Positions 14,228-53,453 of a stretch of DNA of 64,000 nt are shown here, piece after piece. Position 1 is the stretch's first letter. Each line of letters opens with the position of its first letter. The notes beneath the pieces are model-generated. The model made no database searches, was not told the DNA's origin, and saw nothing but the letters and a program-made list of their open reading frames with translations. Made by a program: the position numbers and the translations under genes. Source of the stretch: Malacoraja senta (Eukaryota); contig CM075978.1 in the NCBI GenBank assembly GCA_038087875.1, forward strand, positions 175,150,001 to 175,214,000. The letters run 5' to 3'.

Positions 14228-14282
14228 ATGTTTATGTTTGCCGTGCTGCTGTGTCTCTCGATCCTGCGCATGAGTTACACAG
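14228..14282 (+). CDS. Gene A exon 1: signal peptide MFMFAVLLCLSILRMSYT
   Basis: ATG, hydrophobic core, phase-1 donor AG|GTTAAT, 170-bp intron joining in frame to the V exon. Confidence 0.8.
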
Positions 14283-14452
14283 GTTAATATATTTCCCTCT
14301 ATTAAACGAAAATAACAGGGAAAAGGTCAATCCGCAAAAAGTATAAGATGTACAACTCTTACTTTTCGGTCGAGCTATTTCAGCTATTTGGATTTTTATC
14401 AATCCGTTCATTGTCATTTCACATGTTTAACGTTTGTTTTTAATTCTGACAG

Positions 14453-14776
14453 TTACTGACGGGGCCTCCTCGTTCAGGGTGCGTCTGATTCCCGATAAGG
14501 TAACGAAAGTGAAAGGTGAAAATGTATCCCTATACTGTGCTTTCCCAATCTTCGGTCAGAAAGCACTGGTGGATGTATACTGGAAGAGAGACGGTCAAGA
14601 AGAGACTTTGAATCCCATCGCAAACAGGAGGATGATATTCAACAATGTCCTGAAGGGATCTGCCGAATTACATCTGTTGGACGTGAGCTTCCGTGACTCC
14701 GGGATCTATTATTGCAGTGTGAGAGGCGGGGAAGGAAAGAGTTCCAAAAGCAATGGCACGAGGATTATTGTACACG
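14453..14776 (+). CDS. Gene A exon 2: Ig V-set domain including the G strand (NKp30/SIRP-like)
   Basis: Acceptor ttctgacag| and donor G|GTGAGT, both phase 1; VSLYC..VYW..DSGIYYC; ends SNGTRIIVH. Confidence 0.95.
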
Positions 14777-17060
14777 GTGAGTCTTACTTGATGTTTCGAA
14801 TCACAATACAAAAACAAATATGGTGTGCTACAGAGTTATAAAGTAGCAATAAACGGGCCCTTTCTCAGTCTGTACTAGAGGTTTTGCTCTAGCGATTTAA
14901 GTAATTGGTTTTTCGTGATTGTTGCACCATGAGATCTTTGGACAATCATTATTCTTTAATTTCATATCATTTAGTTATCATTTTTATGTGTAGGGTTAAT
15001 TTTCGAGGCGAGCCCTCAACTGCATCCTGCGAAAGGAGTATAGATTAAGATTGCAGATAGCAGTCAATGAAATATAAACCATCATATGTTAACGAGTATT
15101 GTATCTGCAGTCGTTTAGTCAAAAAAACTACGTTCGAGTCGATACCTGTGATATCCAGATGATGGAGCATTCTTGGGGGATCGCGAATTGAGCTCTATGT
15201 TGCAGAATATCCATGTTTGACCATTTATGTAGCTATTTCTAGTCCAACTAGTAAGTGTTAACAAAACGTGTGTTGTTAGAAGAAACATTTGGTGAATAGT
15301 GAGCCTGATATATTCTAACCGCAAACTTGTGTAAGACTATTCCACCGTGATTTTAGGAATTCATAGTTTCAAAGAAAATCAATGATAAAATACGAGTCAC
15401 AACATATCTGCGACTACAGAAATTAGTTTCTGCCGAGAACGTTATAGCGGAAGTAACAAAAGTTCATGATGAAAATTGTTCAAGAAATTCAGAGGTATAG
15501 CAAGGAAGAATAGGTGGGGTGCGTGGTGGCGTATTAGTGTCGGTGGAAGACAAAAAAACATTACATGATAAACGGGGGGAAATCTGAGAATAATGCAACG
15601 TCACAAAATATGTAAACAAAGGAGATAAATGTAGTACCAGAATTCAAATGATTAAATTGCAAATTGAGAATATTAATCAAAACGTTTTCCGTCAATTTAC
15701 GTTGAGTTTCATTGGAACCCAGCAGAGCGTCGAGTGGGAGAACAGAAGCTTCAATACGAATGACAATTGCACGTCAGTGTCATACTCGATTTCTGGGTGG
15801 AAATATGCCAGAAAGCTTCACCCAACTGAGTAAGGTCTTCCCACCGCACATTTCAATCCCACATCAACAACTACTGAATACACACAGACACGCTACCATA
15901 CCTTGTCCAGTTTAAGTGCCGTGACATGCATTGCGAACAGGACAAATACCTAAAGCACCCCATCATTTTCGAAACTTATAACTGCTCAAAAATCAATCAA
16001 CAACTCCTAAACATAGAACATGAATAGGCCCTTCGGCCCACAATTCCAGTGCCGAATATGGTGCCAAACTAAATAAATCTCCGCTCTGTGTGAGACATAT
16101 CCTTTCATTCCCTGTATTTGCCTATTTAAAAATATCTAAGATGCCCCTATCGTATCTGCCTCTGCAACTACGCATGATGTAGTTAAGCTGGAAAGGGTAT
16201 AGAGCAGATTTACGAGGATGTTGCCACCACGCCAGGGTCTCAGCTATAGGGAGAGCCGAAGCAGGCCAGGACTTTATTCTATTGCAGCCCAGGAGCGTAA
16301 GGAGTGTATCTGATCATGACCGGGATAAATCGGTAATGTGCAAAGCCTTTTACCCGGAGTAGTGGAATCAAGTCCTTGTAAACGAAACATTTCAACACAT
16401 TAAATTACAATAACCGAGGAAAAGAAGTTTGCGTTGCAATTGAGAGATCAATTATGTGCCCGCCACCAGGAAAGCGAAATTGTCAGTCCCATGCACCCTT
16501 TCTTTCTTGGAACGCTTAAATTGCTTTCCACCAGGTGTTTATTTAATTTATTTTTCACGATCTGATTAGCTCTGCTTCCAGCACATTTCCGATCACTACT
16601 TGTGAAACATTCCCGGAAATTCTCTGGTGAGAGCACTTGCATAGATCAGTTTGGGATGGAGATCAAAGATTTACCATCCGATGTGGACATAATGCTTTTG
16701 TTACGTGGACGGGAGCAAAATGGTGACGCTCCTTTGCCTTTATAGATGGTGTCCTATTTGGTGTTAAGTAATGGCTGTTGCTAAACATTTCATTCTATTA
16801 AATCACCCCCCCCCCTCCTCGATCAGCCCCATTTTAATCAAATGCATGCATATTTTATCCCTAAATCCTTTCCAGTGGCCTTCCTTCCACAGACTCGTTT
16901 ACAGTTCCCATGCTTTTCCTTGCAGCCCTTCTCAAATATAGCCACAATATTAGTCATCCACCAGTCTTCATAAAGATCTTTACATGCTAATCCTCTGTTG
17001 ATACACACTCTTATTTTGATGTTTTGGTTTCATTGATTCTCGACGTCTCTAGATTAATTC

Positions 17061-19551
17061 CATTCAAGGGTGAAATTTTAAGAGTACAGAATCTTTATGT
17101 CCCTGTTCGGTTGAAAGGAAATAGTAAAAAATGGAAAGAGCCATGGTTTTCAAGGGAAATTGGACACTTGGTTCGGAAAAAGAGAGAGATCTACAATAAT
17201 TATAGGCAGCATGGAGTAAATGAGGTGCTTGAGGAGTATAAAGAATGTAAAAAGAATATTAAGAAAGAAATTAGAAAAGCTAAAAGAAGATATGAGGTTG
17301 CTTTGGCAAGTAAGGTGAAAGTAAATCCAAAGGGTTTCTACAGCTATATTAATTAGTAAAAGGATAACAAGGAATAAAATCGGTCCATTTGAGAGTCAGA
17401 GTGGACAGCTATCTGCAGAGCCAAAAGAGATGGGGGAGATATTGAACAATTTCTTTTCTTCGGTATTCACGAAGGAGAAGGATATGGAATTATGTGAGGT
17501 AAGGGAAACGAGCAGAGTAGCAATGGAAAATTGTGAGATTCGGGACTTCCGGTGGCGCTATGGAGGCTTGAGTCCAGCGCCAACTAGCNNNNNNNNNNNN
17601 NNNNNNNNNNNNNNNNNNNNNNNNNNNNNNNNNNNNNNNNNNNNNNNNNNNNNNNNNNNNNNNNNNNNNNNNNNNNNNNNNNNNNNNNNNNNNNNNNNNN
17701 NNNNNNNNNNNNNNNNNNNNNNNNNNNNNNNNNNNNNNNNNNNNNNNNNNNNNNNNNNNNNNNNNNNNNNNNNNNNNNNNNNNNNNNNTACTGGAAAACA
17801 CTTCCTATCTCAATGGTTGGCAAAATTAATGCTATAAAAATGATTTTTTTTACCGCAAATATTATACCTTTTTCAGACAATTCCGATATATCTGACAAAA
17901 AAACTTTTAAAAAAAAACTGGACTCTATTGTTAATGATTTTATCTGGGATTATAAGAATCATAGGATAAACAAAAGACCCTTGTGTAAATCAAAAATAAA
18001 TGGAGGCTTGGTTTTACCCAACTTTTTGTTTTATTTCTGGGCTGTTAATATTAAAAATATGAATTTCTGGTTGGAAGAAATAGATCATCAACCAGACTGG
18101 TTAAAAATGGAAAAGGAAGATTGTTTACCTTTTGATATCGGTTCGATATTATTTGCTACGTCTAAATTAAACAAAAAAAATTATAGGGAAAACCCTATAA
18201 TATTTAGTGCTATACGAATTTGGAAACAATTAAAAAAGACATTAAAATTAGATAATTTATCACTTTTTCTTCCAATTGTGAATAACCCTTTGTTTAAGCC
18301 TTCATGGTTGGACGGGGGTTTTACACAATGGAAGAATTATGGAATTAAAAATATGGGACAACTTTATAAGGAAGGCACCTTTCTGACATTTCAGGAGTTG
18401 CAACAGACTTATGGACTTCGAGGAAATGATTATTTCAGATATCTTCAACTTAGAGATTATGTAAAATCGAACTCTCAAAATTTTCGAATTAGAAATTCAG
18501 AAATTCTTGATGAATGTTGGAACAAACATCCTAATACAGAAAAATTAATATCTTATATATATAATATCTTATTAGACAGTGACATTCCTTCGACGGAATT
18601 ACACAGACAAACATGGGAAAAAGAATTAAATCAAGTAATAACGAAAGATACTTGGGAAGAAAGTTTGCAACACATACATCAGTGCTCACTAAACGCCAGA
18701 CATTCTCTAATACAATTTAAAGTAATACATAGGTTACATTATTCAAAAACAAAACTACATAAAATTTTTCAACATATCTCACCTATATGTGATAAATGTC
18801 AGCATTTAGAAGCTACATTATCTCATATGTTTGCAAACTGTATAAAAATTAAAAAATTCTGGGTAAATATTTTCAGTATAATATCTAAAGTAACCGGCAC
18901 ACAATTGGACCCAGATCCAAAATTAATAATACTCGGATTATTAGAATTAAATCAAACATTTAGAACAACACAAAGAAACTTTATTGATTATAGTTTAATA
19001 ACAGGAAAAAAATTAATTCTAAAATTTTGGAAAGGCCCTATGGCCCCCACAATCAAAATGTGGATTATAGAAATGACGGAGACCTTAAACGTGGAAAGAA
19101 TCAGATTTTCCCTGTTGGACAAACAGGAATTATTCGTAGGAACATGGTCTCCTTTTATTGATTACTTAAAGGGTCAGAATAGTTCAGCACAGGAACCTGA
19201 CTAGCACTCGGGCTAAAGAATGGATGAAATGCTATACTCTGAAATGTACGAATATATCTCGAATGAAGTTTTTTATTTTAATAAATTTTTCCATTCTTCT
19301 TTAACTATTTTTCTCCTTTTTTTTTTTTTTTTTTCTTTGTTTTTTTTTATTTTTTTTTTAATTCTTCTTCTCTTTCTTTTCTTTCTTTACTTCATCTATC
19401 TCTTTAGTTCTATCTAGTTTAAAAAATAAAAAAATAAAAAGGCAAAAGGTATTGGAGACAATGTAATAATAATTGACAATATTATCAATTTAAAAATGTT
19501 AGACTGTAATGATGTAAATAGGTTGTGTACTTATCTCCAATAATAAAAAAT

Positions 19552-19584
<33 letters not shown>

Positions 19585-21277
19585 AAACTGTGAGATTCAA
19601 AGAAGAGGAGGTGCGGACACTTTTGAAAAATATGAAAACGGATAAGTCTCCAGGTCCTGACAGGATATTCCCTAGGACATTGAGGGAAGTTAGTGTAGAA
19701 ATAGCAGGGGCTATGACAGAAATATTTCAAATGTCATTAGAAACGGGAATAGTGCCGGAGGATTGGCGTACTGCGCATGTTGTTCCGTTGTTTAAAAAGG
19801 GTTCGAAGAGTAAACCTAGCAATTATAGACCTGTTAGTTTGACGTCAGTGGTGGGCAAATTAATGGAAAGGATACTTAAAGATAATATATATAAGCATCT
19901 GGATAAGCAGGGTCTGATTAGGAACAGTCAACATGGATTTGTGCCTGGAAGGTCATGCTTGACTAATCTTCTTGAATTTTTCGAAGAGGTTACTAGGGAA
20001 ATTGATGAGGGTAAAGCAGTGGATGTTGTCTATATGGACTTCAGTAAGGCCTTTGACAAGGTTCCTCATGGAAGGTTGGTTAAGAAGATTCAATTGTTGG
20101 GTATTAATGGTGGAGTAGCAAGATGGATTCAACAGTGGCTGAATGGGAGATGCCAGAGAGTAATGGTGGATGGCTGTTTGTCAGGTTGGAGGCCAGTGAC
20201 TAGTGGGGTGCCTCAGGGGTCTGTGTTGGGTCCACTGTTGTTTGTCATGTACATCAATGATCTGGATGAAGGTGTGGAAAATTGGATTAGTAAGTATGCA
20301 GATGATACTAAGATAGGTGGTGTTGTGGATAATGAAGTAGATTTTCAAAGTCTACAGAGAGATTTAGGCCATTTGGAAGAGTGGGCTGAAAGATGGCAGA
20401 TGGAGTTTAATGCTGACAAATGTGAGGTGCTACATCTCGGCAGGACAAATCAAAATAGGACGTACACGGTAAATGGTAGCGAATTGAGGAATGCAGTTGA
20501 ACAGAGGGATCTAGGAATAACTGTGCATAGTTCCCTGAAGGTGGAATCTCATGTAGATAGGGTGGTAAAGAAAGCTTTTGGTGTGCTGGCCTTTATAAAT
20601 CAGAGCATTGAATATAGAAGTTGGGATGTAATGTTAAAATTGTACAAGGCATTGGTGAGGCCAATTCTGGAGTATGGAGTACAATTTTGGTCGCCTAATT
20701 ATAGGAAGGATGTCAACAAAATAGAGAGAGTACAGAGGAGATTTACTAGAATGTTGCCTGGGTTTCAGCAACTAAGTTACAGAGAAAGGTTGAACAAGTT
20801 AGGTCTTTATTCTTTGGAGCGCAGAAGGTTAAGAGGGGACTTGATAGAGGTCTTTAAAATTATGAGCGGGTTAGACAGAGTGGACGTGGATAAGCTTTTC
20901 CCATTGAGAGTAGGGAAGATTCAAACAAGGGGACGTGACTTGAGAATTAAGGGACAGAAGTTTAGGGGGAACATTAGGGGGAACTTCTTTACTCAGAGAG
21001 CGGTAGCTGTGTGGAATGAGCTTCCAGTGGAAGTGGTGGAGGCAGGTTCGATGTTATCCTTTAAAAATAGATTGGATGGGTATATGGACGGGAAAGGAAT
21101 GGAGGGTTATGGTCTGAGTGCAGGTAGATGGGACTAGGGGGAAGTATTTTATTTTTAATTAAAAAAAATATATATATATATATATATATATATTAAATGT
21201 TCGGCACGGACTTGAAGGGCCGAGATGGCCTGTTTCCGTGCTGTTATGGTTATATGGTTATATGGTTATATGGTTAT
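17061..21277 (+). mobile_element. 5'-truncated CR1 LINE (same subfamily as 8206-12783) split by an L1 insertion; RT open 19590-21137
   Basis: Near-identical to 10660-12783 by eye; GVPQGSVLGP, YADDTK; (ATATGGTT)n tail. Confidence 0.95.
17542..19583 (+). mobile_element. L1/Tx1-clade LINE with both ends present, interior hidden by an assembly gap
   Basis: 5' end gggacttccggtggcgct; 200 N (17589-17788); open ORF2 C-terminus 17813-19204 with CDKC..H...C motif; aataa signal and poly(A); TSD gaaa(at/c)tgtgagattc on both sides. Confidence 0.9.
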
Positions 21278-22595: not shown

Positions 22596-22877
22596 TGTCA
22601 CCGACGCCTTTGAAGATTAAACAAATGGACACTCCTTCCCTGGCCCTAAACTGTACAACTGCTCCGTTTTTCCCGGAGGACTGTGAACTTACCTGGTATA
22701 AAGATGACCATGAAATCACTTCTGGAATAAGTACCACTAAAATACGGAACGATGAGGGCTTATACCTTGCTTCCAGCTTCCTGCGTGTAGTGGATAGCCG
22801 ATCGGTTTATAGTTGCCACCTATCTCACGTCACCCTCCTGGTTCGGACCATTGAAACTCACAGATTTCCTGGAATCG
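22596..22877 (+). CDS. Gene A exon 3: Ig C1-set domain
   Basis: Acceptor ttgtttacag| and donor G|GTATGA, phase 1/1; LNC...FFP....LTWYK...YSCHLSH is the C1 pattern (F[YF]P, W, YxCxxxH). Confidence 0.93.
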
Positions 22878-24027
22878 GTATGAGGTTTATACCTTCAATA
22901 ACGTCCCGAGATATATCACTGTTTTTTATGTCAAGGAATTTCATGAATTCCCACCCAACACTTACGCCAGACCGTTTTTAAGTATTTGAATGGAGATTGT
23001 GAGCATGCCTTTGTTGAAATGGAAAGGTATGACAGTCTATGAAATTAGATACTGGTTAGTAAGAGATATCGCGCAAAGATGACAGTTGTATTTGCATGTT
23101 TGTATAATAGCGGACGCTGGAACTCGCTGTTTATCTCCGATCATATAGATCTCTACAGCATGGAAGCATGGCCCTTCGGCACGCCCCGTCCACGTCAAGC
23201 AAATTGCCATTCTGGCCTAGACCCATCTCTCCGAATTTGACCATTTCCCCTCTAAATCTTTCCTATCCAAATATCTATCCACATATCATTTGAAAATCCG
23301 CAAATGTATACGCTTCCGTAGCTTCCTCGGAAAGAAATTGCCCCTTGGGACCCACGTAACCTTCCATGTTAAGAATCCATTACCCTGGCAAAAACGACTG
23401 TAAGCATTCACTTTCTCTACGCCCATCATAATTATATATACTTGAATTAGGTAAACCTCCTATGCCTCATGGGAAGAGGTCACAACTTATTCAGCATCAC
23501 CGGATAACTCCAGCCATGAATTCCAGATAATACCTTGGTGAATCCTTTCTGCACCTTTCCAACATAATGACATGGTACGTATAGCAGGATGACCAAGACT
23601 GCACACAGAACACCAACGAGTCATCTCAGCAAATACTTGTAAAGCTGTTTCCCTGCATAATAAGGGATCTGTTTTCTGTTTATATGTAAATTAATTTTCA
23701 ATCTTATCGCTGTAACATTGGAGACTGGAGAGGGGTTGTAATCCAACATATTTCAAGTTCCAAGGGTCAAAAACAACAAGACAGAGGCCAAGGGAGATTT
23801 TATGGCATTAACACAGATGATTTATTTTTCATTAACTCAGATGATTTATTTTTTCATCGTTGCTGATCTGTGATGAGATTCAAACAGAAGAGGAAAATGA
23901 AAAGAAAGGAGAAATAAGAAAATGTTCGAATGGTCATACACACAATACGGATAAACGATAATTCCGGTTGATGGGCGTTCCTCAGAACGGTCTGATCTGT
24001 TCTGTGCTCCCAGACATTTCAAGACAG

Positions 24028-26096
24028 ATTCTAAGGGGAGTATGAGGCAACCGTGGCAGACAAGAGAAGTTAGGGATATAATAACATTAAAAGAAAAGAT
24101 GTATAACACAGCAAAGAGTAGTCGGAAGCCAGAGGATTGGGAAACTTTCATAGGACAACAGAAGGAAACAAAACGGGCAATACGGGCTGAAATGGTGAAG
24201 TACGGGGGGAAGCTGGCCAGGAATATAAAGAAGGACAGTAACAGCTTCTTTAGATATGTTAAGGAAAAAAGAGTAGCAAAATCAGATGTAGGTCCCTTGA
24301 AGGCAGACACGGGCGAAATTATTATGGGGAAGAAGGAAATGGCAGAGGAGTTGAACAGGTACTTTGAATCTGTCTTCACTAACGAAGACACCAACAATCT
24401 CCCGGAAGTACTGGAGGATAGAGGATCAAAGGGGGTAGAGGAACTGAAAGAAATGATCATTAGGTGAGAAATAGTATTGGGTAGGCTAATGGGATTGAAG
24501 GATGATAAATCCCCTGGGCCCGATGATCTGCATCCCAGGGTCCTCAGGAAGGTGGCTCTAGAAATAGTGGTCGCACTGGTGATCATTTTCCAATGTTCAA
24601 TAGATTCAGGATCAGTTCCTGTGGAATGGAGGATAGCTAATGTTATCCCAATTTTCAAGAAAGGAGCGAGAGAGAAAACGTGGAATTACAGACCAGTTAG
24701 CCTGACTTCGGTGGTGGGAAAGATGCTGGAGTCAATCAATAAAGCGGTAATAATGGGGCATTTGGATAGCAGTAAAAGGATTAGTCCAAGTCAGCATGGA
24801 TTTATGAAAGGAAAATCATGCTTGACTAATCTTCTGGAATTTTTTGAGGATGTGACAAGCAGAATGGATGAAGGGGAGCCAGTGGATGTAGTGTGTCTAG
24901 ACTTTCAGTACGCCTTTGATAAGGTCCCGCACGGGAGACTGGTGACTAAAATTAGAGCACATGATATTGGGGGTAGGGTGTTGACGTGGATAGAACATTG
25001 GTTGGTAGACAGGAAGCAAAGTGTAGGAGTGAACGGGTCCTTTTCAGAATGGCAGGCAGTGGCGAGTGGAGTGCCGCAATGCTCGGTGTTGGGGCCGCAA
25101 CTGTTTACGATATATTAATGATTTGGAAAAGGGAATTAGGACCAACACCAGCAAGTTTGCAGATGACACAAAGCTGGGTGGCAGTGTGAACTGTGAAGAG
25201 GATGTTAGGACGTTGCAGGATGACCTGGACAGGTTGGGTGTGTGGGCAGATGCGTGACAGATGCAGTATAATATAGATAAATGTGAGGTTACCCACTTTG
25301 TGGCAAAAACAAGGGGACAGATTATTATCTCAATGGGTTAGGTTAGGTAAGGGGGGGTACAGCGAGACCTGGGTGTCCTTGTACACTGGTCACTGAAAGG
25401 TGGCGTGCAGGTACAGCAGGCAGTGAAGAAAACGAATGGAATGTTGTCCTTCATAACAAGAGGATTTCAGTATAGGAGTAGAGAGATTCTTCTGCAGTTG
25501 TATAGGGCTCTGGTAAGACCACATCTGGAGTATTGTGTACAGTTTTCGTCTCCTAATTTGAGGAATGACATCCTTCTGATTGAGGCAGTGCAGCGTAGGT
25601 TCACGAGATTGATCCCTGGGATGGCGGGACTGTCATATGAGGAAAGATTGAAAAGACTAGGCTTCTATTCACTGGGGTTTAGAAGGATGAGGGGAGATCT
25701 TATAAAAACATATAAAATTATAAAAAAGACTGGACAAGCTAGATGCAGGCAAAATATTCCCAATGTTGGGCGAGTCCAGAACCAGGGGCCACAGTCTTAA
25801 AAAAAAGGGGAGGCCATTTAAGATTTAGGAGAGAAAAAACGTTTTCAGCCAGAGAGTTGTGAATTTGTGGAATTCCCTGCAACAGAGAGCAGTGGAGGCC
25901 AAATCACTGGATGGATTTAAGAGAGAGTTAGATAGAGCTCTAGGGGCTGGTGGAATCAAGGGGTATGGGGAGAAGGCAGGCACGGGTTATTGATTGGGGA
26001 CAATCAGCCATGATCACAATGAATGGCGGAGTTGGCTCGAAGGGCCGAATGGCCTCCTACACCTATTTTCTATGTTTCTATGTTTCTATGTTTCTA
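24028..26096 (+). mobile_element. 5'-truncated, disabled CR1 LINE (same subfamily as 1-1871)
   Basis: ORF fragments 24042-24467, 24477-25118 and 25405-25800; (TATGTTTC)n tail. Confidence 0.95.
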
Positions 26097-29000: not shown

Positions 29001-30553
29001 CTTCTTCAAACTTAATGACTATGTATATAGACGTGTAACATTTCGATGGCCAATTAACCAACAATCTTGCAAGTCGTTGAGATTTGGGAAGATGTTAGAG
29101 TACCCTAAGAAAGTCACGTGATCACCGTGGGAATATAAAAACTCCAGAGAACACTGGAGGCTAGAATTGATCCAGGGTCTCTGCAGATGTGAAACAGCAG
29201 ATTTACTAACTGCGAAGATGTGCCAGGAGTGGATCCAGAGTGTCACTTTCTCGGGATGGTATAACGTGACTAACGTCTATATTGTTCAAACCATTTTGAA
29301 AGCTGGGATAGTGCACGTGTAACATTTCGATGGTGAATCAATGATTGGTTCGCCAAACCCTCTCAGAGATATATCACAACTCAGAATACTTCTGATCTCG
29401 TGTTGATAAATGAATCCTATCGACTGCAGTTATCTTTCCAAAATTGTAACAGTCAGTCTATAGTTCAATTAAATAGCCTTTACGACATCAAAGGTCCCAA
29501 CACGAAGAAGACACAGAACCGAAACGTAGAATAATTTATTTTTCCGAATACAAAGTACATTACAGATCGTGCGCGAGAAATCTTGTTTTTTATGCCCACT
29601 GGAATTAATTTTTGGTGTTTTCACTCCAGGTATTTCGTTTCCTTAAAGTTTATATTTTGATTGCCGGAAAGTTGGAGGATTCCTCCCTGTCACCAGTGAC
29701 ACGGCGGAACGAGGAGATGGGGTGACAAGCGCATCCGTGCAATGTCAAAATAGTATGTAGACATCAAATATGAAAGAGAAACAAAGGAAAATGTTTGAGA
29801 TTCGCAACTATCAGACAGTATATATGAAGAGTAAAACAAAGCTCAGTCCTCTTTAAATGCTACTGATCGATTTTAAAAAAATTAGAATTAAGGATGAAGT
29901 TTCAGGTACTTGGATGCACATGATAAAATATGCAGACGTCAGCATGATTGTGTTAACGGGGGATCTTGCCTGACAAATCTTTGGGGGGGTTTTGGGGAGA
30001 TAACAAGCGGGATGGACGAGAGAGAGTCAATGAGCGTCGTTTACTTGGAATTTAAGTAGGCCTTTGATAAGGTGCCCAATGTGAGGCAGCTAAACAAAAT
30101 AGAAGCGCTTGGCATTAGGGGCAAGGAATTAGCACGGATTGAAGATTGGCTGGCTGGCAGAAGGCAATCCATGTCAATAATGGGGCCTTTTGTGGTTGGC
30201 TACGTTTTAATAGTGGTATTCTGCAGGGGTCGGTGTTGAGTCTGCTACATTTTACATTATATGTTAATTGTCTGGATGATGAAATTGATGGCTTTGTCGG
30301 CAGGTTTTCCGATGATATGAAGATAGGTGCAGATAGTGTTGAAGAAGCAGGGAGTCTGCAGAAGGACTTGGACAGCTTGGAAGCGTGGGTGGAAACAAGT
30401 GGCAGATGGAATACTGTGTAGCAAAGTCATGCATTTGAGAGAAGAGAGAAAATGTAGAATCCATCCTGTAATTCCCTGCTTCGTGTAATCTGATTATTAA
30501 ATGAAGTCAACCTCTCTGAAAAATTCTAATATTCAGCTTTCATTTCCCTTTAG

Positions 30554-30665
30554 GAACAAGCGTTAAACTCATCTGCTTTCGGGCGGGTGGATTTGCCATA
30601 TGCGTTTTAATTATTCTAGCGCTGGTATTTTTTTGTCAGGCGGTACGAATTAGACAGTACTGAAG
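30554..30665 (+). CDS. Gene A exon 4: transmembrane exon with Arg (TSVKLICFRAGGFAICVLIILALVFF); contains an apparent +1 T frameshift
   Basis: Strong acceptor tttcatttccctttag| and donor AG|GTAAGA. As written it stops at 30663; with one T fewer in 30628-30634 it reads VRRYELDSTE through to a phase-1 donor. Confidence 0.88.
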
Positions 30666-32120: not shown

Positions 32121-32338
32121 CAGTCTATGTCTAAGAAAGAACTGTGGATGCTGGTAAAATCGAAGGTAGTCACAAAAGCTAGATAAACTCAGCGGGTGAG
32201 GCAGCATCTATGAAGAGAAGCAATATGCGACGTTTCGGGTCGAGACCCTTCTTCAGACTGATCATACTGAAGAAGGGCCTCGACCCGAAACGCCGCCTAT
32301 TCTCTACCTTCAGTTTATGTCTAATCCGTCTGCGTCAG

Positions 32339-32679: not shown

Positions 32680-32775
32680 AATCCAACGTACGCAGATTTG
32701 AACTTCAGCAGACAGAAGAAAACTGAGAAAAACAGACGGGACGAAAAACAAACTGGCTATGCTCAGGTCAGATAA
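32680..32775 (+). CDS. Gene A exon 6: terminal cytoplasmic exon NPTYADLNFSRQKKTEKNRRDEKQTGYAQVR*
   Basis: Acceptor gttccctcag|, phase 0; two tyrosine motifs (PTYADL, TGYAQV); AATAAA at 32881-32886. Confidence 0.8.
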   Translation, partial: NPTYADLNFSRQKKTEKNRRDEKQTGYAQVR

Positions 32776-33419
32776 AAGCGGAAGGGTGCTCCAAGGAAAA
32801 TTCGCGTACGTCGCCCATATAGGCGAATCGGCAGCTAATGGTCTTTGATTATTTTTCGATAGGTCAAAGAAGTGTCTGAAAATAAACTGACCTACGCAAC
32901 TCTGGATCTCATCGCTTCTCCGAAAGATCCAAGAACGGAGAAGAATAATGTAACAGAATATGCAGGAATGAAGATTTTAAAATGGCTGCGAAATCATCAA
33001 ACGTTCATTAGAGGTCATCCAATTTAAATTACATAAACCTGACTAACATTGTGTCACAGATCGCACAGATACATTAGCATTTACAAGAGAATCAGCAGTG
33101 AGCAGGGGATTTTAATGAGATGTTCTTCTCTGATAAACGTTACTCTCGTTAACGTCGATAGAAATACGATTAATTATCAGACTCTCGTCGCAATTCCTAG
33201 CTAACCACATAAGACCCTTATCTATCCACTTTTAGCCCATCTAAGTGCTTGTGGAAATGCCAGCTAAAGGGTGTGTATGTGTCTGCCTCCACCAACTCCT
33301 TGCCAGCTCGCCCATGGTAGTCACCATATTGTGCGTACATAATTATCTCACTCTATTCCACTCATCTCATCTGAAGCATACGCTCATCAGTTAAATATTT
33401 CTCCACTATATTAAGACAA

Positions 33420-35527: not shown

Positions 35528-37112
35528 AGTCAGAAGGCCAATTAATGGTATACTTTGAACGGAGGAAGTGCCATTATCCTCCATTATTACTGACAATTAA
35601 ACCACGTGAGGAGCATTATGTTCAATTCTGGTCGACAGGGTGGGTCTATTTACGCTGGTCATAGTGCAGAGGTGATTCAGTGGTCTGTTGCCTAAATTAG
35701 AACATTTTAGTTATGGGGTGAAATTTGATCGGATTGGAATGTATTCCTCGAGCCTACGAGGCAGAGTGATGAACTGCTGCACGTATGTCAAATTATTGGA
35801 GGCATAGACAGTGACGACAGTCAGTATCTTTTCCAATTCAAGTCATATAGGAATCAAGAAGGCAGAGACCATATGCAACACTCAATTGACGAGGAAACGC
35901 CGACATGTCCCGTAGTCAAAAGAAGTAACCGTTTTCGTATGTACCCGGCTTCTACTCGTGCCGATGAAGTCATTGACCCAAGACCAGCATGAGCGGTCTA
36001 ACTTGAAGAGTCTATTTTTAATTAGGAAGCATTTGAAACGTTTCATGTTCGATAATGTATGACCCCTGAGTAAAAAACATCTCCACGTCAGTTCAATGCA
36101 GATCCTTACGTTTGTTAATGGGCAAGGTGTATGATCTGAAAGATGAATCCTAATGGTAAATTTCATAACTGGAATTGTCAGTTGATTGGGTTCAAAGGAG
36201 CATTTATTTGAGTCAGTAATAGCTTGAAACAATCCACATTGTTTGCGGAATATCCGAGTAAATTTGTTTATTTTTAATCTATAAGGAATGCATGGATCCA
36301 TAAATAAACTGAACAAAATCCACCATATACCAGAGCACTTGAAAATATGACTGCCTCGTCACTAATATTCCTGCGAATTTTTCAGAGTACGGTAGATTAC
36401 AATTTACAGTTTGGTTTATGTTTCCTGTATTGATGTCCATTTCTTCTACCACGCGTTCAGGTCGACGATGTGTTGTCTGTAAAATAGTGTTTCATAAGTA
36501 AGATCGTCGTCAATTCATTTCACCTTTTGCTTTGACAGCTGTGTCTCAGTAACTACGCCACCAAAATAAATTCATGGATCCATAAATAAAGACAATGCAT
36601 TCCGTAACACTGAATTGAAAATAAATATCCTCTCTCAGCTCTCGAACAATTTATTGGTAAATTATCCTTGATCAGCTTGTATTCATCTTGTTTAATTCCT
36701 TTTATCTTCAAATTTTTCAGTATTTCGTGACTAAGAAATTATAAGATGTTTCAGCTTCTAGCCGTCTACCACTNNNNNNNNNNNNNNNNNNNNNNNNNNN
36801 NNNNNNNNNNNNNNNNNNNNNNNNNNNNNNNNNNNNNNNNNNNNNNNNNNNNNNNNNNNNNNNNNNNNNNNNNNNNNNNNNNNNNNNNNNNNNNNNNNNN
36901 NNNNNNNNNNNNNNNNNNNNNNNNNNNNNNNNNNNNNNNNNNNNNNNNNNNNNNNNNNNNNNNNNNNNNNNNNNNNNNATTTTCTCGAAAATCAGACGCA
37001 AAAACGCGGAGATTTTTACAATTTCTGTAAGGATTTAACTTACAATTTCATAAATGCACTCCTCTCTAGATTTGGTCAATTATATCCCCAGATTTTGAAT
37101 AAAATTGTTCAC

Positions 37113-37331: not shown

Positions 37332-37990
37332 TCTCCCCCTCCCTCCCTCCCTTACACCCCCGTGCCTTCCCCCACTCCCCCATCTCCTCTCTCCCCTCCT
37401 CCCTCCCCCACTCTCTCCCCCCCTCTCTCCCCCCCTCCTCTCTCTCCCCCTCCTCCTCTCTCTCTCCCCCTCCACTCACCCCCTCTCCTCTCTCTCCCAC
37501 TCCACTCCTCTCTCCAGCTCTCCCCTCCCGCTCTTCCTCCCCCTCTCCCCTCTTCTCCCCCACCCTCTCCTCTCACCTCCCCCTCTTCCCCTCTCCTCTC
37601 CCGCCCCTTCCCCCACAACTCTCTCCCCCCTCACCCATCCTTCCCCTCCCCCCTCTACCACCCCCTTCCCCCTACCCCTTTATCCCCTTCACCCTCCCCG
37701 CTCTCCTCCCATCCTCATCCCCCTCCATCTCCCTTCCCCCTCCCCTTTCCTCCCCCTCCCCACTCTCTCCCCATCTCCCCCTCCCCACTCTCTCCCCATC
37801 TCCCCCTCCCCCTCCCCACTCTCTCCCCATCTCCCTCTCCCCTCCTCCCCCACCCCCCCCCCTCACCCACCCATCCTCTCCTCCTCCCCTCCACCCCCTC
37901 TCCCTCTCTCTCTTGCCCTTCTGTCTCTGCCCCTCTCTCTCTCTGTCTCTCCCCATTCTCTCTCTGCCCTCACTCTCTACCCCCCCTCTC
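37332..37990. repeat. ~650-bp C/T-rich low-complexity tract
   Basis: Almost all pyrimidines on +; the Pro/Ser- and Gly/Glu/Arg-rich ORFs here are compositional artefacts. Confidence 0.95.
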
Positions 37991-44045: not shown

Positions 44046-44119
44046 TTAATTAATTAATTCATTCATTCGTCTTGCCTTCGTTTTCTGATCGGCACTTTCT
44101 TTCGATGTTCTGCACGTCC
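44046..44119 (-). CDS. Gene B exon 5 (predicted): short cytoplasmic tail GTCRTSKESADQKTKARRMNELIN*
   Basis: Pyrimidine-rich acceptor ttttctctctaaattacctccctatag|, phase 1; minus-strand AATAAA at 43927-43922; no tyrosine. Confidence 0.65.
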
Positions 44120-44781: not shown

Positions 44782-44874
44782 CTTTATATATCACAATGAA
44801 AGTAACGATTATGATAGGTATCAATCCTGCTCTTATGTAACCAAAAAGCGTATTATGAAGTGGATTAACAAAAA
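44782..44874 (-). CDS. Gene B exon 4: stalk + transmembrane with Arg (FVNPLHNTLFGYIRAGLIPIIIVTFIVIYK)
   Basis: Acceptor ttttttattgtttacag| and donor AAG|GTAAG; 93 bp, phase 1/1; same R-A-G motif as gene A. Confidence 0.9.
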
Positions 44875-50484: not shown

Positions 50485-50787
50485 CTCGACTGTAGAAAGT
50501 ATAACTGATATTGGTTGGATTCGGAAGAGAAATATGAGACACCTGGCAGGTATAAACTGTCCCGCTCTCCACATGGCCTGTCTCGGTCAGGCAGCTCCAA
50601 GCTTCGTACAGTCCTGCTGTTGTCTGCGTTTTGTTTGGATCAATCTTCTGTATAATATCTGACCCATTTTTGTACCAAGTAATATTTAGATCAAGAGGAA
50701 AGAACGTTGCTGTTTTACAAACGAGAATTAGAGCAACTGATGTGTTCACTGGCAGCATGGTGGTCAAGCTCAGAGGAGTTGGGCGGT
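50485..50787 (-). CDS. Gene B exon 3: Ig C1-set domain
   Basis: Acceptor ttttattttccag| and donor G|GTAAGA, phase 1/1; LVC...FFP.DLNITWYK...GTVYTCQVSHISL. Confidence 0.95.
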
Positions 50788-52900
50788 CTGGAAAATAAAA
50801 CGATTATTAAATTTCACCAGTCCGGTGATTTTCGTGACTTGAATCAAATTTCATTGCAGCCTCGAAAATAATCTTCATTGAACAATATTTTTTTTCAGCC
50901 TAGTTGTATAACTAATGCACTTAAAGCGATTTAAAACTGCTAAGTTTGTTCCTTGTGGTATAAACTAACGGCTAATTTCATTCCTTTTAAACCTTTTTAT
51001 TGTATGCCCTGATTTTACAGTTTGCGTCTATTATACAACAATTACCTTACTTCATAAATATCATATCGTTTCTGTTTCTACTCGCAGCGCAAGTAAATGA
51101 TGCGTTCTGTTCCATGCACAGACATTAAGAGCCAAAGCATTAACTTGAATTTTCTAAACGTCTTCACGATTTTTATTATAATTTGGTGATATCATTGTAC
51201 AAAATGTAACCCATAATAACAGCTCGACTATCAAAATGTTACAAATATATTCTTTACCGTTGTTGAAATAAATAAATCGTGCAGAAGATTTATTCAGCAG
51301 TAACTTGAGGTCAAAAATATGTTTGAGTTAGAAGGTCAGAAAAATGTGTGTCCTTGTGTGAAACAATATTGTAAAGTTGGACCAGAGCGTACAGCTTGCT
51401 ATTTATAATTCCGTTAAGCACAGAAGAAAGTAATTGCATTACTTCGAGAGCAATTATCCCAGCACCAACACATTCCCTTAAGAATTTGGATGGTATGTTA
51501 AGGCCTCCGACACACCATATCAATGACATTCATTCATGGAAAAGTCACCAACCCTTTCCATTTACAACAGCTCAAACAGTGATCAGCGTCTGCGTACGCC
51601 GCCCAAAATGTAGGCTTGAGATACAAACTACAAGTACATTTGCACCAGTTATAAACAATCCTTTTTCAATATCTATATGATCTTAATGCCATTTCCATCG
51701 CTTGGAAGGTGAGCGGAGAATACACGTTAATGCAACAATGTGTAGGAAGGAACTGTAGATGCTGGGTTAAACCGAAGATAGACACAAAAAGCTGGAGTAA
51801 CTCAGCGCGCAGAAGGCATCTCTGGATAAAAGGAAAAGGTGACGTTTCGGGTCGTGACCCTTCTGCAGACTAAATGTAACAATATAGATCTTGAATTTTG
51901 CATTCCTCAATGATTGACTCGATTCACGGCTCCTATATAATTTCAAGTAATCCGGGACAATCAGATGTGTGACCAAACTTATACTACGGTTAAACATGGT
52001 ACCAATTGAGCAAGTGCAAAAGAGGTTCACCAGAATGTTGACTGAAATAAAGGGCCTTTTTATAACGAGACATTTGGTAAACTGCGTTTATTCTCAATGG
52101 AAGGAAGGAAGCAGAGTAGTGACTTAATAAACGTTTTTGTTTTAAATATCGGGGCCACATAGCATAGACGGGGTCTTTTCCTCAGAATAGTGGAATTAAG
52201 AACTATGTGGCACGGTTTTTAGGTAAAAGGGGGGAAATGTAAATGAGAAGAGGAAGTTTTACATACCTGGAACATCTACCACCGGAGAGGGTGCAGTACA
52301 ATAATAACATTTAAATTGCGTTAGACCAGTAATTGCGCAGAAGCGTTATAGAGCGATATGGGCCTAATGCAGGCAAACAGCATCAACATACACAATTAGC
52401 ACCGTCGGCAGAGGCGACGTGGGCAGAACGGGCCAGTTGTTGTGTTGTATGATTCTATGATTCTGTAATTCCTTACACTTGTAATTCCTTACACTTTAGA
52501 TTAAAAAAAGATGGCAGCTCCAAATATATAAATTAAAAAAATAATATCCTTGATCAGTACCACATTCGGAACCCTACATATTTTCAATCTCAACTACCTG
52601 TGCCGTGTGTCGTTGGTTTCAGTAACACCATTCCCTCTGCGTTGAAGCAATTCTAAAATATATGCGAAAGGTTCTATAATTCTGTCAAGCAGATGTGGAA
52701 GGCGTAATTTACTCTCTCCATCGGTCTATTCGGATTCTTTGGTAATTGCGTCAAAAATACTATCTAACCAATCACACAAATCATATTATTTCAAAGGACA
52801 CAGATGATGAATAAAGCGCAATTTCTTCAACGTGATTGAGCTTATCGCTTTGAGTTGGTGAAGTTAACCGATCTGGCTTACCCCTCTCCCCGAAACTCAC

Positions 52901-53212
52901 CGTAAACTACCAGCTTTGTACCAGTCCCGTTTAAAACGTTGGTACGTGTCAAGCTGCAAAAATAGAGCCCGGCGTCCTTCACTGTCACGTCCTCCAGCCG
53001 TAAGACAGCGCTTCCCCCTCTCAGGAAATAAAACTGGATTCGTTTATCTGCACTTTCATCCAGGAATCTATTATCCCCATCTCTCCACCAATGCACTTTG
53101 TACGGCCTGTTGTCTGAGAAGATTGGATAAATGCAGTAAAGCACTGCCGAGTCACCCCGCATCAAAACAGCTTCTGGAACTTGTGTTACGGTCAACGGGC
53201 CATCGTCACCAG
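52901..53212 (-). CDS. Gene B exon 2: Ig V-set domain with J-like GTGTKLVV G strand
   Basis: Acceptor tttcgtttcccgacag| and donor G|GTGAGT, phase 1/1; VLYC..VHWWRDG..DAGLYFC..NGTGTKLVVY. Confidence 0.95.
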
Positions 53213-53401
53213 CTGTCGGGAAACGAAAAATGAAACGATAAGGCTTAGGATTAAACTAATGACCAAATTAATTGAAAATTGTACGTAACGAGAACAAAAA
53301 TAAAGATAAACTTATAAGTTAATAATTAAGTTAATTTATAATATTTAAGTTATAAATATTTATAACTAAATTTATAATAATTAAGTTAATTTAAAATATA
53401 C

Positions 53402-53453
53402 CTGCGCAGCTGACGTGAAGAACAATCAATTGCAGTAAGACACGTGTCATCAT
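53402..53453 (-). CDS. Gene B exon 1: signal peptide MMTRVLLQLIVLHVSCA
   Basis: ATG ATG, hydrophobic core, phase-1 donor CAG|GTATAT, 189-bp intron in frame with the V exon. Confidence 0.88.

What the first reader, a model, noticed from the sequence alone, without database searches (positions are those of the whole stretch)
14228..53453. Tail-to-tail pair of V-C1 immune receptors: a candidate paired activating/inhibitory system
Seen: two convergent paralogous genes share one exon plan (leader, V, C1, TM with R-A-G, cytoplasmic), with phase-1 junctions through the TM exon. The V domains are clearly related (YC..PIF.....V.W.RDG, DxGxYxC, NGT) but very divergent. Gene B has a tyrosine-free tail; gene A has YADL and TxYxxV motifs. 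Established: paired receptor families (KIR, SIRP, LILR, CD300, teleost NITR) combine charged-TM adaptor-coupled members with ITIM members. Inference: this is a chondrichthyan paired receptor family mixing an NKp30-like V and TM with a SIRP/B7H6-like C1. I cannot tell whether it has been described.
Basis: partly seen in the sequence, partly recalled or inferred. Interest (0 to 1): 0.9.

Follow-up and report, generated by a model that had tools for sequence, protein, structure and literature searches.

The report
Two activating-type V-C1 immune receptor genes
Two neighbouring genes of a cartilaginous fish encode antibody-like surface sensors from a large shark, ray and chimaera family that has no settled name and comes in 'on' and 'off' versions; both copies here are of the 'on' type, and one still carries the unused remains of an 'off' tail.

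Summary
Two convergent genes each encode leader, germline-joined V(J), C1-set domain and a transmembrane (TM) exon with Arg-Ala-Gly, joined by phase-1 GT-AG junctions. Both assembly gaps lie outside exons.

The genes belong to a multigene family that I found only in Chondrichthyes (18 species). Databases give its members only conflicting automatic names (SIRP-alpha-like, tapasin-related, B7H6-like, Ig-lambda-like). The family mixes inhibitory members (uncharged TM, 2-4 ITIM/ITSM-like tyrosines) with activating-type members (TM Arg, short tail). The two types interleave on the tree, with at least 9 switches.

The reading "A inhibitory, B activating" is not supported for this pair. Gene B (277 aa) is activating-type. 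Gene A also has the TM Arg (CGG, against Leu CTG in Mobula and in a same-species paralogue). One extra T relative to the Mobula exon puts a stop 9 codons after the TM. Independent DNA contigs from two samples show the same seven-T run.

Gene A's two tyrosine-motif exons are still open but cannot be reached in frame. The linking micro-exon was not found, and one donor is weakened. Gene A therefore looks like an inhibitory receptor converted to an activating one.

No RNA data were available. I could not read the shark NCR3 paper, so prior description is unresolved. The scan's first readers flagged related genes elsewhere in this genome.

The parts
14228..14282 (+). Gene A exon 1: split leader (18 codons + 1 base, phase 1)
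   Evidence: ATG, hydrophobic leader and GT donor read directly. In frame in the spliced model.
14453..14776 (+). Gene A exon 2: germline-joined V(J) domain, ending ..SNGTRIIVH
   Evidence: Pfam V-set E 1.2e-10. 53-58% identical to the Mobula/Hemitrygon P0078 group. NKp30 aligns over its full length at E 2e-4.
17589..17788 (.). Assembly gap inside gene A intron 2. It touches no exon.
   Evidence: N run, flanked by retrotransposon ORFs. The V and C1 exons on either side have the same nearest relatives.
22596..22877 (+). Gene A exon 3: C1-set domain
   Evidence: Pfam C1-set E 1.6e-11. AG acceptor and GT donor, phase 1.
30554..30665 (+). Gene A exon 4: TM exon. Arg codon CGG at 30580-30582, T7 run at 30628-30634, in-frame TGA at 30661-30663.
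   Evidence: Read directly. Alignment to the Mobula birostris TM exon shows CTG(Leu) to CGG(Arg) and a single extra base in the T run. A contig of X1 is identical, and X2 shows no deletion at the T run.
32680..32766 (+). Gene A relic exon: NPTYADLNF...TGYAQ (ITIM-like plus ITSM-like tyrosines). Phase-0 acceptor, weak GTC donor.
   Evidence: Open frame and splice sites. tblastn matches to the tails of relatives, E down to 6e-8. All other contigs have A, not C, at donor position +3.
32863..33027 (+). Gene A relic exon: ..KLTYATLDL...TEYAGMKI.. then stop (second ITIM/ITSM-like pair)
   Evidence: Open frame and AG acceptor. 63% identical to the Hemitrygon P0156 tail over 35 aa, E 9e-7.
36774..36978 (.). 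Assembly gap in the intergenic stretch between the two 3' ends
   Evidence: N run. No family exon lies nearby.
44046..44119 (-). Gene B exon 5: 24-aa tyrosine-free tail ending ..NELIN, then stop. AATAAA at 43927-43922.
   Evidence: Aligns to the first cytoplasmic exon of Heptranchias P0002 up to its first ITIM (weak, E 0.02).
44782..44874 (-). Gene B exon 4: TM exon with Arg (AGA, 44833-44831) in ..GYIRAGLI..
   Evidence: Relatives P0004 and P0002 have Gly or Leu at that place.
50485..50787 (-). Gene B exon 3: C1-set domain
   Evidence: Pfam C1-set E 3.6e-11. PDB matches to MR1/MHC-I alpha3, IgM and SIRP-alpha.
52901..53212 (-). Gene B exon 2: V(J) domain ending ..NGTGTKLVVY (full GxGTxLxV J motif)
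   Evidence: Pfam V-set E 2.3e-8. 59% identical to Heptranchias P0002.
53402..53453 (-). Gene B exon 1: split leader (phase 1)
57976..58300 (-). Third V exon of the family, a pseudogene upstream of gene B (two stops, one frameshift, first Cys lost)
   Evidence: tblastn E 2e-34, 60-70% identical to skate proteins P0077 and P0083. Frames shown.

Best explanation
Genes A and B are two members of a multigene family of non-rearranging V(J)-C1-TM receptors found so far only in cartilaginous fish. The family works as a paired receptor system.

**Inhibitory members.** These have an uncharged TM and a tail with two pairs of ITIM/ITSM-like tyrosines. They are inferred to recruit SHP-type phosphatases.

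**Activating-type members.** These have an Arg in the outer third of the TM and a short tail. They are inferred to couple to an ITAM adaptor with an acidic TM residue, of the CD3-zeta/FcR-gamma type, as NKp30 does.

**Both genes in this window are activating-type.**
- Gene B is an established one. It has Arg, a 24-aa tail and its own poly(A) signal, and no tyrosine exons remain.
- Gene A is an inhibitory gene converted to an activating one. A single T-to-G change made Leu into Arg. One extra T in a T run shifted the frame into a stop 9 codons after the TM. The two ITIM/ITSM exons persist downstream as unreachable relics.

**Shown versus inferred.** Shown here: the gene models, the family, the two lesions and their presence in independent DNA. 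Inferred: expression, adaptor coupling, signalling sign and ligand.
For: **Gene models.**

**Family.** A HMMER search of the gene B V exon against 1.84 billion representative proteins finds many V-C1-TM relatives. Every relative that carries a name is from a chondrichthyan, 18 species in all including Callorhinchus, and all names are automatic and inconsistent.

**TM and tail survey.** Inhibitory members read ..SGCAAGG.. in the TM and have 2-4 xxYAxL/TxYAxI motifs. Activating-type members have Arg at about the same TM place and tails of 5-37 aa (P0054, P0072, P0083, P0142, P0159, P0176, P0177, P0178, P0124).

**Tree of the ectodomains.** The two types interleave. Parsimony needs 12 changes, and starred branches force at least 9, among 45 labelled rows. 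This is no more clustered than shuffled labels. Near-identical ectodomains can carry opposite tails (P0078 and P0159).

**Gene A conversion.**
- In the DNA alignment with the Mobula TM exon, the only gap is one base in the T run, and CTG stands where gene A has CGG.
- The other frame of the exon end reads VRRYELDSTE. This matches the RRCRVDRTE / KRWKLERSE found in relatives.
- The Mobula gene needs a 44-nt micro-exon between the TM exon and the first tyrosine exon. None was found here.

**DNA contigs.**
- A contig of run X1 is identical to the window across the TM exon.
- Run X2, a second sample with 6 SNPs, has no deletion at the T run.
- A collinear 93%-identical contig of a related species keeps CGG, and no deletion is reported at its T run.
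- 88%-identical paralogue contigs have CTG(Leu). In one species such a contig also has one T fewer.
- Gene A alone has derived changes in the first tyrosine exon and a weakened donor (GTC instead of GTA).

**Gene B.** No tyrosine-exon remains were found downstream. AATAAA lies about 120 nt after the stop.
Against: - No RNA evidence exists for either gene. The only runs holding the sequence cover introns evenly, so they are DNA.
- Gene A could be a decaying pseudogene rather than a working activating receptor. Its stop lies 2 nt before a good donor. If splicing continued downstream, the mRNA could be an NMD target. The nearest AATAAA is 285 nt downstream.
- Gene A's two relic exons have stayed open over 84 codons. 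This leaves room for a use that I did not find.
- The X2 contig has 13 gap letters that the output does not place.
- X1 may come from the same individual as the assembly.
- Activating and inhibitory labels for relatives rest on RefSeq gene models, which can miss tail exons.
- Adaptor coupling is inferred from NKp30, KIR and SIRP-beta precedents. It was not tested.
Confidence: 0.68

Rival explanations
1. First reader's reading. Gene A is the inhibitory partner (ITIM/ITSM tail, 325 aa), gene B is the activating one, and the stop in gene A's TM exon is a homopolymer slip of the assembly or a rare allele.
For: The tyrosine exons are open and have an AG acceptor each. The -1 frame of the TM exon end matches relatives. 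A T7 run is error-prone in long reads. A related species has a contig with one T fewer.
Against: Short-read-derived contigs of two samples show T7. Gene A has Arg where its inhibitory relatives have Leu. With T6 the phases still do not fit (phase 1 into phase 0), and no 3n+2 linking exon was found. A direct splice gives a stop after 15 codons. The donor of the first tyrosine exon is GTC only in gene A. The T6 contig also carries Leu, so it looks like the paralogue and not gene A.
Confidence: 0.1
2. Gene A is a pseudogene on its way out. The frameshift simply killed an inhibitory receptor, the Arg is incidental, and only gene B is functional.
For: Frameshift, missing micro-exon, weakened donor and unique substitutions in the tail exon. 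The first Gly of the J motif is Ser in gene A. A dead V exon lies nearby. Gene birth and death is usual in such clusters.
Against: Leader, V, C1 and TM exons are all open, with canonical Cys/Trp residues and intact splice sites. Arg plus a short tail is exactly the recurrent activating design of this family. In the collinear contig of a related species the Arg is kept and no T-run deletion is reported, which suggests that the state has been maintained.
Confidence: 0.18
3. A and B are the two chains of one heterodimeric, TCR-like but non-rearranging receptor. Each chain is V(J)-C1 with a basic TM residue. They pair through C1 and assemble with CD3-type modules.
For: The chain architecture equals that of a TCR or Ig light chain. 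Fold matches include TCR beta and Ig light chains. The two divergent paralogues sit together and both carry a TM Arg.
Against: There is no cysteine in the connecting peptide of gene B. Relatives occur as many independent genes with their own ITIM tails, which is typical of single-chain receptors. The nearest relatives of A and B in other species are inhibitory. No pairing test was possible, because no multimer prediction tool was available.
Confidence: 0.05
4. The genes are simply members of an already described family: the shark 'NCR3 (NKp30) family' of Kinlein et al. 2021, or shark B7H6 of Flajnik et al. 2012.
For: VJ-type V domain with the NKp30-like motifs W(W/K)RDG and GNGTRxxV, and a TM R-A-G. 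NKp30 aligns over the whole V domain. Some RefSeq relatives are named NCR3LG1-like. V-TM isoforms without C1 are predicted in relatives (P0058, P0103, P0140). The 2021 paper reports eight highly divergent subtypes (from my memory of its abstract).
Against: I could not read either paper. No relative carries an NKp30/NCR3 name, and no nurse shark entry appeared in three searches. Veríssimo et al. 2023 (PMC10751288) list NKp30 among the 'VJ genes' and call UrIg the novel non-rearranging VJ-C1 gene. That would be odd if shark NCR3 were known to be VJ-C1. NKp30 and B7H6 are not the best sequence matches.
Confidence: 0.4

Closest known systems
SIRP family (SIRP-alpha inhibitory, SIRP-beta activating) of tetrapods
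   Same: N-terminal V domain with a J-like strand, followed by C1-set domain(s). Paired design: a tail with four tyrosines in two pairs, against a charged TM with a short tail. SIRP-alpha and SIRP-gamma C1 domains match gene B's C1 at E about 1e-10. Most RefSeq relatives are auto-named SIRP-alpha-like or SIRP-beta-1-like. From memory, the human SIRP-alpha tail order (ITYADLNL, TEYASI, LTYADLDM, SEYASV) resembles gene A's relic tail (PTYADLNF, TGYAQV, LTYATLDL, TEYAGM).
   Different: One C1 domain instead of two. The activating forms use Arg near the outer face of the TM, not the Lys of SIRP-beta. The V domain is not specifically SIRP-like in PDB searches. Identity to SIRP-alpha in the fold alignment is 15%. 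CD47 binding is unknown.
NKp30 (NCR3)
   Same: Non-rearranging VJ-type V domain in one exon after a split leader. The J-like end (GNGTRLVV in man, from memory; SNGTRIIV in gene A). An Arg-Ala-Gly in the TM with a short tail. Whole-V alignment to PDB 3noi, 3pv6 and 9fww.
   Different: A C1 domain lies between V and TM. The family includes many ITIM-tailed members. The sequence match is weak (E 2e-4 to 4e-3) and no better than to PD-L1 or pIgR. MHC linkage is not shown: the scan's unchecked notes place this genome's MHC genes on other pieces.
B7H6 (NCR3LG1) and the B7/butyrophilin family
   Same: The same V-C-TM layout. B7H6 is the second-best fold match (TM-score 0.58, rmsd 5.3 A over 258 residues). 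PD-L1, CD276 and butyrophilins follow. PD-L1 V is the best single-domain PDB sequence match of gene A's V.
   Different: 18-20% identity. B7 ligands have no TM Arg forms and no paired ITIM/ITSM tails. A separate, slower-evolving subgroup of the shark family (P0039, P0046, P0183; Lys-rich tails) sits at the tree's midpoint root. That subgroup may be the true B7H6-like branch.
Activating KIR and Ly49 derived from inhibitory genes
   Same: The same evolutionary route: a charged TM residue gained and the ITIM tail cut off by a small lesion, recurrently within one family. I take this from Abi-Rached and Parham 2005, from memory. Here at least 9 switches are needed on the tree, and gene A shows the two lesions directly.
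   Different: Unrelated ectodomains (KIR: Ig domains of another set; Ly49: lectin). Here the relic tail exons are still open.
Teleost NITR and elasmobranch UrIg/UrIg2
   Same: Non-rearranging receptors with a germline-joined VJ domain. NITR also come as ITIM or charged-TM forms. UrIg2 (PDB 9dmx) matches gene A's C1 at E 1.7e-13 summed over three of its domains.
   Different: NITR lack a C1-set domain. UrIg and UrIg2 have 3-9 C1 domains, form disulfide-linked homodimers, and are single or low-copy genes without ITIM/Arg pairing (PMC12227049).

Membership tests
Paired activating/inhibitory Ig-superfamily receptor family (generic kind) | Closely related ectodomains combined with either ITIM-type tails or a charged TM residue plus a short tail, within one gene family | tested here: met
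   TM and tail survey of about 90 relatives. The tree has interleaved types, including near-identical ectodomains with opposite tails.
Paired activating/inhibitory Ig-superfamily receptor family (generic kind) | The two genes of this window form an activating/inhibitory pair | tested here: not met
   Both have a TM Arg and a short tail as encoded. Gene A's tyrosine exons are unreachable in frame. The T7 run is confirmed in DNA contigs.
Paired activating/inhibitory Ig-superfamily receptor family (generic kind) | Association of charged-TM members with ITAM adaptors, and SHP recruitment by ITIM members | not testable with these tools
   Needs co-expression and biochemistry.
NKp30 / NCR3 | Ectodomain made of a single VJ-type V domain only | tested here: not met
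   A C1-set exon lies between V and TM in both genes.
NKp30 / NCR3 | TM arginine with a short signalling-motif-free tail | tested here: met
   CGG at 30580-30582 and AGA at 44833-44831. Tails of 9 and 24 aa.
NKp30 / NCR3 | Sequence orthology (NKp30 as nearest named relative) | tested here: not met
   NKp30 PDB chains score E 2e-4 to 4e-3, behind PD-L1, pIgR and others. It is not among the top Swiss-Prot fold matches.
NKp30 / NCR3 | Linkage to the MHC | not testable with these tools
   The window holds only these genes and repeats. The scan's unchecked notes put MHC genes on other pieces of the assembly.
SIRP family | V domain followed by two C1-set domains | tested here: not met
   One C1 exon per gene. 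No further family exon is present in the window.
SIRP family | Four-tyrosine inhibitory tail in some members, charged TM in others | tested here: met
   Relatives have 2-4 motifs. Gene A's relic exons hold four. The charge is Arg, not Lys.
SIRP family | Orthology to SIRP, and CD47 binding | tested here: inconclusive
   The C1 domain matches SIRP-alpha and SIRP-gamma at E 1e-10, but the whole-chain fold identity is 15%. The tail comparison rests on memory only, and the Atlas search of a tail gave only generic TM adaptors. Binding is not testable.
B7H6 (NCR3LG1) | V-C1-TM ligand with a long motif-bearing tail, orthologous in sequence | tested here: inconclusive
   The layout is shared and it is fold rank 2. 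However, identity is 18-20%, B7H6 chains are absent from the best 60 PDB sequence matches of both domains, and TM Arg forms are foreign to B7H6.

The most novel reading that the evidence does not exclude
The V(J)-C1-TM(Arg) genes are surviving relatives of the pre-RAG antigen-receptor chain and of the ancestor of NKp30 before it lost its C1 domain. On this reading cartilaginous fish keep a large, undescribed cluster of antigen-receptor-shaped, non-rearranging paired receptors with NKp30-type TM coupling and SIRP-alpha-type tails, and gene A is a direct snapshot of an inhibitory-to-activating switch.
Probability: 0.2. Interest if true: 0.8.

Novelty: new variant of a known kind. Interest (0 to 1): 0.6.

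Why it matters
Paired activating and inhibitory receptors (KIR, LILR, SIRP, NITR) are central to innate recognition, but little is known of them in the oldest jawed vertebrates. This locus matters for three reasons.

- **An unnamed paired family.** Sharks, rays and chimaeras have a large family built on an antigen-receptor-like V(J)-C1 chain. Databases currently hide it under conflicting automatic names.
- **Recurrent switching.** The signalling sign has switched many times within the family.
- **A switch caught in the act.** Gene A preserves both causal lesions (Leu to Arg, and a one-base frameshift) together with the intact relics of its inhibitory tail. That makes the conversion directly testable.

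If the family is related to NKp30, B7H6 and SIRP as its mosaic features suggest, it bears on the origin of NK receptors and of antigen-receptor chains.

Tried and rejected
**Literature.**
- Kinlein 2021, Flajnik 2012 and Ohta and Flajnik 2015 are not held in the library.
- Searches for shark paired, ITIM or SIRP receptors found nothing relevant.

**RNA evidence.**
- No RNA run holds the genes. The holders are DNA, so the junctions could not be confirmed by reads.

**Searches for named relatives.**
- Three word-indexed protein searches (one gene A relative, a 36-member family profile, an orectolobiform profile) returned only automatic names and no nurse shark NCR3 entry.
- Profile searches of the V and C1 alignments against PDB are swamped by multi-domain proteins and antibodies and do not discriminate. 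The same holds for the Foldseek PDB search.
- The ESM Atlas look-up of the gene B V exon gave only generic V-set clusters. The look-up of a relative's tail gave only generic tyrosine-motif adaptors.

**Linking micro-exon in gene A.**
- Three searches all failed: enumeration of splice sites and frames, tblastn with the relatives, and a motif scan.
- The one weak hit, at 30758-30784, lies in a common repeat and was rejected.

**Relics in gene B.**
- No ITIM relics were found downstream of gene B.

**Synteny in Mobula.**
- The Mobula gene B relative P0004 could not be located, because only the longest isoform of a gene is indexed. Conservation of the tail-to-tail arrangement was therefore not tested.

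**Hypotheses rejected.**
- An assembly misjoin at gap 1.
- One-to-one orthology with SIRP, B7H6 or NKp30.

Full report
**1. What is in the sequence**

The window is mostly retrotransposon debris (LINE-type reverse-transcriptase ORFs). It holds two convergent Ig-superfamily genes.

Gene A lies on the + strand.
- Split leader: 14228-14282.
- Single-exon V domain with a J-like end: 14453-14776.
- C1-set exon: 22596-22877.
- TM exon: 30554-30665.
- Every junction is GT-AG in phase 1. The spliced model gives 256 aa and stops at a TGA (30661-30663) inside the TM exon.

Gene B lies on the - strand.
- Leader: 53453-53402.
- V(J): 53212-52901.
- C1: 50787-50485.
- TM: 44874-44782.
- Tail: 44119-44046.
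- The model is a clean 277-aa ORF with canonical sites at every junction. AATAAA lies about 120 nt after the stop.

Pfam calls V-set (E 1e-10 and 2e-8) and C1-set (about 1e-11) for the four domain exons. A and B are real but divergent paralogues. The V domains are 34% identical (E 2e-20) and the C1 domains 41% (E 2e-18). Both TM exons carry Arg-Ala-Gly.

**2. The assembly gaps**

Gap 17589-17788 sits in gene A's V-to-C1 intron, between LINE ORFs. Gap 36774-36978 sits between the two 3' ends. Neither touches an exon.

I tested for a misjoin at the first gap in two ways.
- Gene A's V and C1 exons both find the same Mobula/Hemitrygon gene group as nearest relatives.
- The Mobula birostris gene has a 7.2-kb intron at that place, against 7.8 kb here.

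**3. The family**

A full HMMER search with gene B's V exon against 1.84 billion representative proteins found many single-V relatives of 220-490 aa with the same V-C1-TM plan. Look-ups and three further searches gave one consistent picture.
- Every relative that carries a name comes from a cartilaginous fish. The 18 species are Heptranchias perlo, Heterodontus francisci, Scyliorhinus canicula and S. torazame, Mustelus asterias, Carcharodon carcharias, Cetorhinus maximus, Chiloscyllium plagiosum and C. punctatum, Hemiscyllium ocellatum, Stegostoma tigrinum, Mobula birostris and M. hypostoma, Hypanus sabinus, Hemitrygon akajei, Narcine bancroftii, Amblyraja radiata, Leucoraja erinacea and Callorhinchus milii.
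- Their names are automatic and contradictory: SIRP-alpha-like, SIRP-beta-1-like, tapasin-related, NCR3LG1-like, CD276 homolog, Ig lambda-like, MHC class II-like.
- The best identities to the window's genes are only 50-59%.

**4. A paired family**

I surveyed the TM segments and tails of about 90 relatives. Two designs appear.
- Inhibitory design: an uncharged TM (..SGCAAGG..) with a tail of 70-150 aa holding 2-4 motifs of the type xSYAxL, TVYAQx, LTYAxL or TEYAxI.
- Activating design: an Arg at about the same TM place (ICRSIGG, ILRCAMG, ISRCVMG, AIRCTVG, CVRIMCG) with a tail of 5-37 aa.

On a maximum-likelihood tree of 70 ectodomains (quick search) the two designs interleave.
- Parsimony needs 12 changes among 45 labelled rows, and starred branches alone force at least 9.
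- This is no more clustered than shuffled labels (mean 13.4).
- Nearly identical ectodomains carry opposite signalling parts (P0078 against P0159; P0174 against P0072).

Gene A falls in a 98%-supported clade with the Mobula/Hemitrygon P0078 group (5 inhibitory, 1 activating). Gene B falls with Heptranchias P0002 (inhibitory) and a Callorhinchus protein (99%).

**5. Gene A is a converted inhibitory gene**

I aligned gene A's TM exon with that of Mobula P0078. Outside the short intron flank, the only gap in the whole exon is one base inside gene A's T7 run (30628-30634). Mobula has CTG (Leu) where gene A has CGG (Arg, 30580-30582).

Downstream of the T run the other frame reads VRRYELDSTE and ends in phase 1 at a good donor. 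This matches the RRCRVDRTE / KRWKLERSE that follows the TM in relatives. The ancestral frame therefore ran on, and the extra T created the stop.

Two further exons downstream remain open.
- Exon 32680-32766 reads NPTYADLNF...TGYAQ.
- Exon 32863-33027 reads ..KLTYATLDL...TEYAGMKI.. and then stops.
- Both match the tails of relatives, with E down to 6e-8.

These exons cannot be used, for three reasons.
- The first begins in phase 0, while the TM exon would end in phase 1.
- In Mobula a 44-nt micro-exon bridges the two. I found no counterpart here by three methods.
- A direct splice gives a stop after 15 codons.

**6. Is the extra T real?**

The only runs that hold the region cover introns evenly, so they are DNA. 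They are available only as assembled contigs. Laying four runs on 30300-33200 gave the following.
- A 453-nt contig of X1 (same species) is identical to the window across the TM exon.
- X2 (same species, another sample, 6 SNPs) shows no deletion at the T run.
- X22 (related species) has a collinear contig, about 93% identical over 1.3 kb. It keeps CGG, and no deletion is reported at its T run.
- Contigs about 88% identical, present in all four runs including the window's own species, carry CTG (Leu). In X27 such a contig also has one T fewer. This is evidently the inhibitory sibling gene.
- In the first tyrosine exon the window's copy alone has derived states: three amino-acid changes, and C instead of A at donor position +3 (GTC against GTA).

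Caveats:
- X1 may be the assembly's own individual.
- The X2 contig has 13 gap letters that the output does not place.
- Not all indels of low-depth contigs are listed.

**7. Gene B**

Its TM reads ..LFGYIRAGLIP... The closest relatives read ..IYGYLGTGII.. and ..IFGCLGAGLI.., so Arg stands where they have Gly or Leu.

Its tail exon aligns with the first cytoplasmic exon of Heptranchias P0002. It ends (..NELIN, then stop, in an AT-rich repeat) where P0002 has its first ITIM (..RLTYLTL). The match is weak (E 0.02), so this last point is only suggestive.

No tyrosine exons remain downstream.

**8. Comparison with known families**

Sequence matches to solved structures:
- NKp30 aligns over the whole V domain including the J-like end, but only at E 2e-4 to 4e-3. 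This is behind PD-L1 V (1.7e-6 for gene A) and pIgR D1.
- The C1 domains match MHC-I/MR1 alpha3, IgM, SIRP-alpha and SIRP-gamma (E about 1e-10), HLA-DM beta and UrIg2.

Fold matches came from an AlphaFold model of the activating relative P0072 (pLDDT 84).
- The best reviewed matches are PD-L1, B7H6, TCR beta, SIRP-alpha, CD276, butyrophilins, TAPBPL and Ig light chains.
- All are at 21% identity or less.

The family is therefore a mosaic.
- It has a VJ-type V domain and a TM Arg as in NKp30.
- It has a V-C layout as in B7H6 and the B7 family.
- It has a C1 domain and, from my memory of the human sequence, a four-tyrosine tail as in SIRP-alpha.
- It is a one-to-one orthologue of none of them.

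A slower-evolving subgroup with Lys-rich tails (P0039, P0046, P0183) sits at the midpoint root of the tree. It may be the true B7H6-like branch.

**9. Has it been described?**

Kinlein et al. 2021 reported eight divergent nurse shark 'NCR3 family' subtypes. I could not read that paper or Flajnik et al. 2012. No entry named NKp30 or NCR3 appeared among the relatives.

Veríssimo et al. 2023 (PMC10751288) list NKp30 among the 'VJ genes' of the MHC. They call UrIg the novel non-rearranging VJ-C1 gene. This suggests that a VJ-C1-TM multigene family was not recognised then.

I put the chance that this family overlaps the published NCR3 family at about 0.4. V-TM isoforms that skip C1 are predicted in relatives.

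The scan's own first readers flagged many further V-C1 genes up to about 380 kb before the window, about 24 kb after it, and about 4.9 Mb beyond it. These include tyrosine-tailed ones next to this window. Those notes are unchecked.

**10. Verdict**

The family-level idea of a paired system is right. The assignment within this pair is wrong: both genes are activating-type, and gene A is a convert that still carries its inhibitory relics. Expression, adaptor coupling and ligand remain inferred.

Noticed in passing
window 57976-58300 (- strand): A third V exon of the same family lies upstream of gene B and is dead. It has two stops and one frameshift, and the first canonical Cys is replaced (FHSS). 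Its nearest relatives are skate proteins (60-70% identity). No matching C1 exon lies nearby.
   Followed up: partly
window 37208-38076, next to gap 36774-36978: About 0.9 kb of CT-rich low-complexity sequence gives long Pro/Ser/Leu ORFs in three frames. The 36-38 kb composition bin has the window's strongest GC skew (-0.51).
   Followed up: no
window 53991-54317 and 55228-55593 (- strand): Two nearly identical ORFs of 108 and 121 aa (both starting MCISSCISCSFDSYRF) lie about 1.24 kb apart. This looks like a tandem duplication of unknown nature just upstream of gene B's leader.
   Followed up: no
window 30814-31156: About 330 bp are present in the window but absent from the collinear contig of a related species (X22 record 17). 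The stretch includes a very high-depth repeat at 30785-30881, so it is probably a SINE-type insertion in gene A's intron after the TM exon.
   Followed up: no
window 32680-32766: Read in phase 1, as after a direct splice from the TM exon, this exon gives ESNVRRFELQQTEEN and then a stop. Its VRRFELQQTE resembles the -1 reading of the TM exon end (VRRYELDSTE; 7 of 10 residues, with different codons). This may be chance or an old internal duplication.
   Followed up: no
L001 (Mobula birostris CM057570.1, 3.83 Mb): RefSeq model P0058 joins the V exon of another gene directly to the TM and tail exons of the P0078 gene, skipping C1. Similar V-TM isoforms are predicted in Heterodontus and Scyliorhinus. 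If real, they are NKp30-shaped products of V-C1 genes.
   Followed up: partly
window 44046-44070 (- strand): Gene B's stop codon lies in a short AATG/AATT repeat (..GAATGAATGAATTAATTAATTAA), at the position where its nearest relative has its first ITIM.
   Followed up: partly
window 1-12700, 17000-21200, 24000-25800, 62500-64000: There are several LINE-type endonuclease and reverse-transcriptase ORFs, some long (463-515 aa). Copies at 10905-12314 and 19590-21137 are nearly identical, so the elements are young.
   Followed up: no
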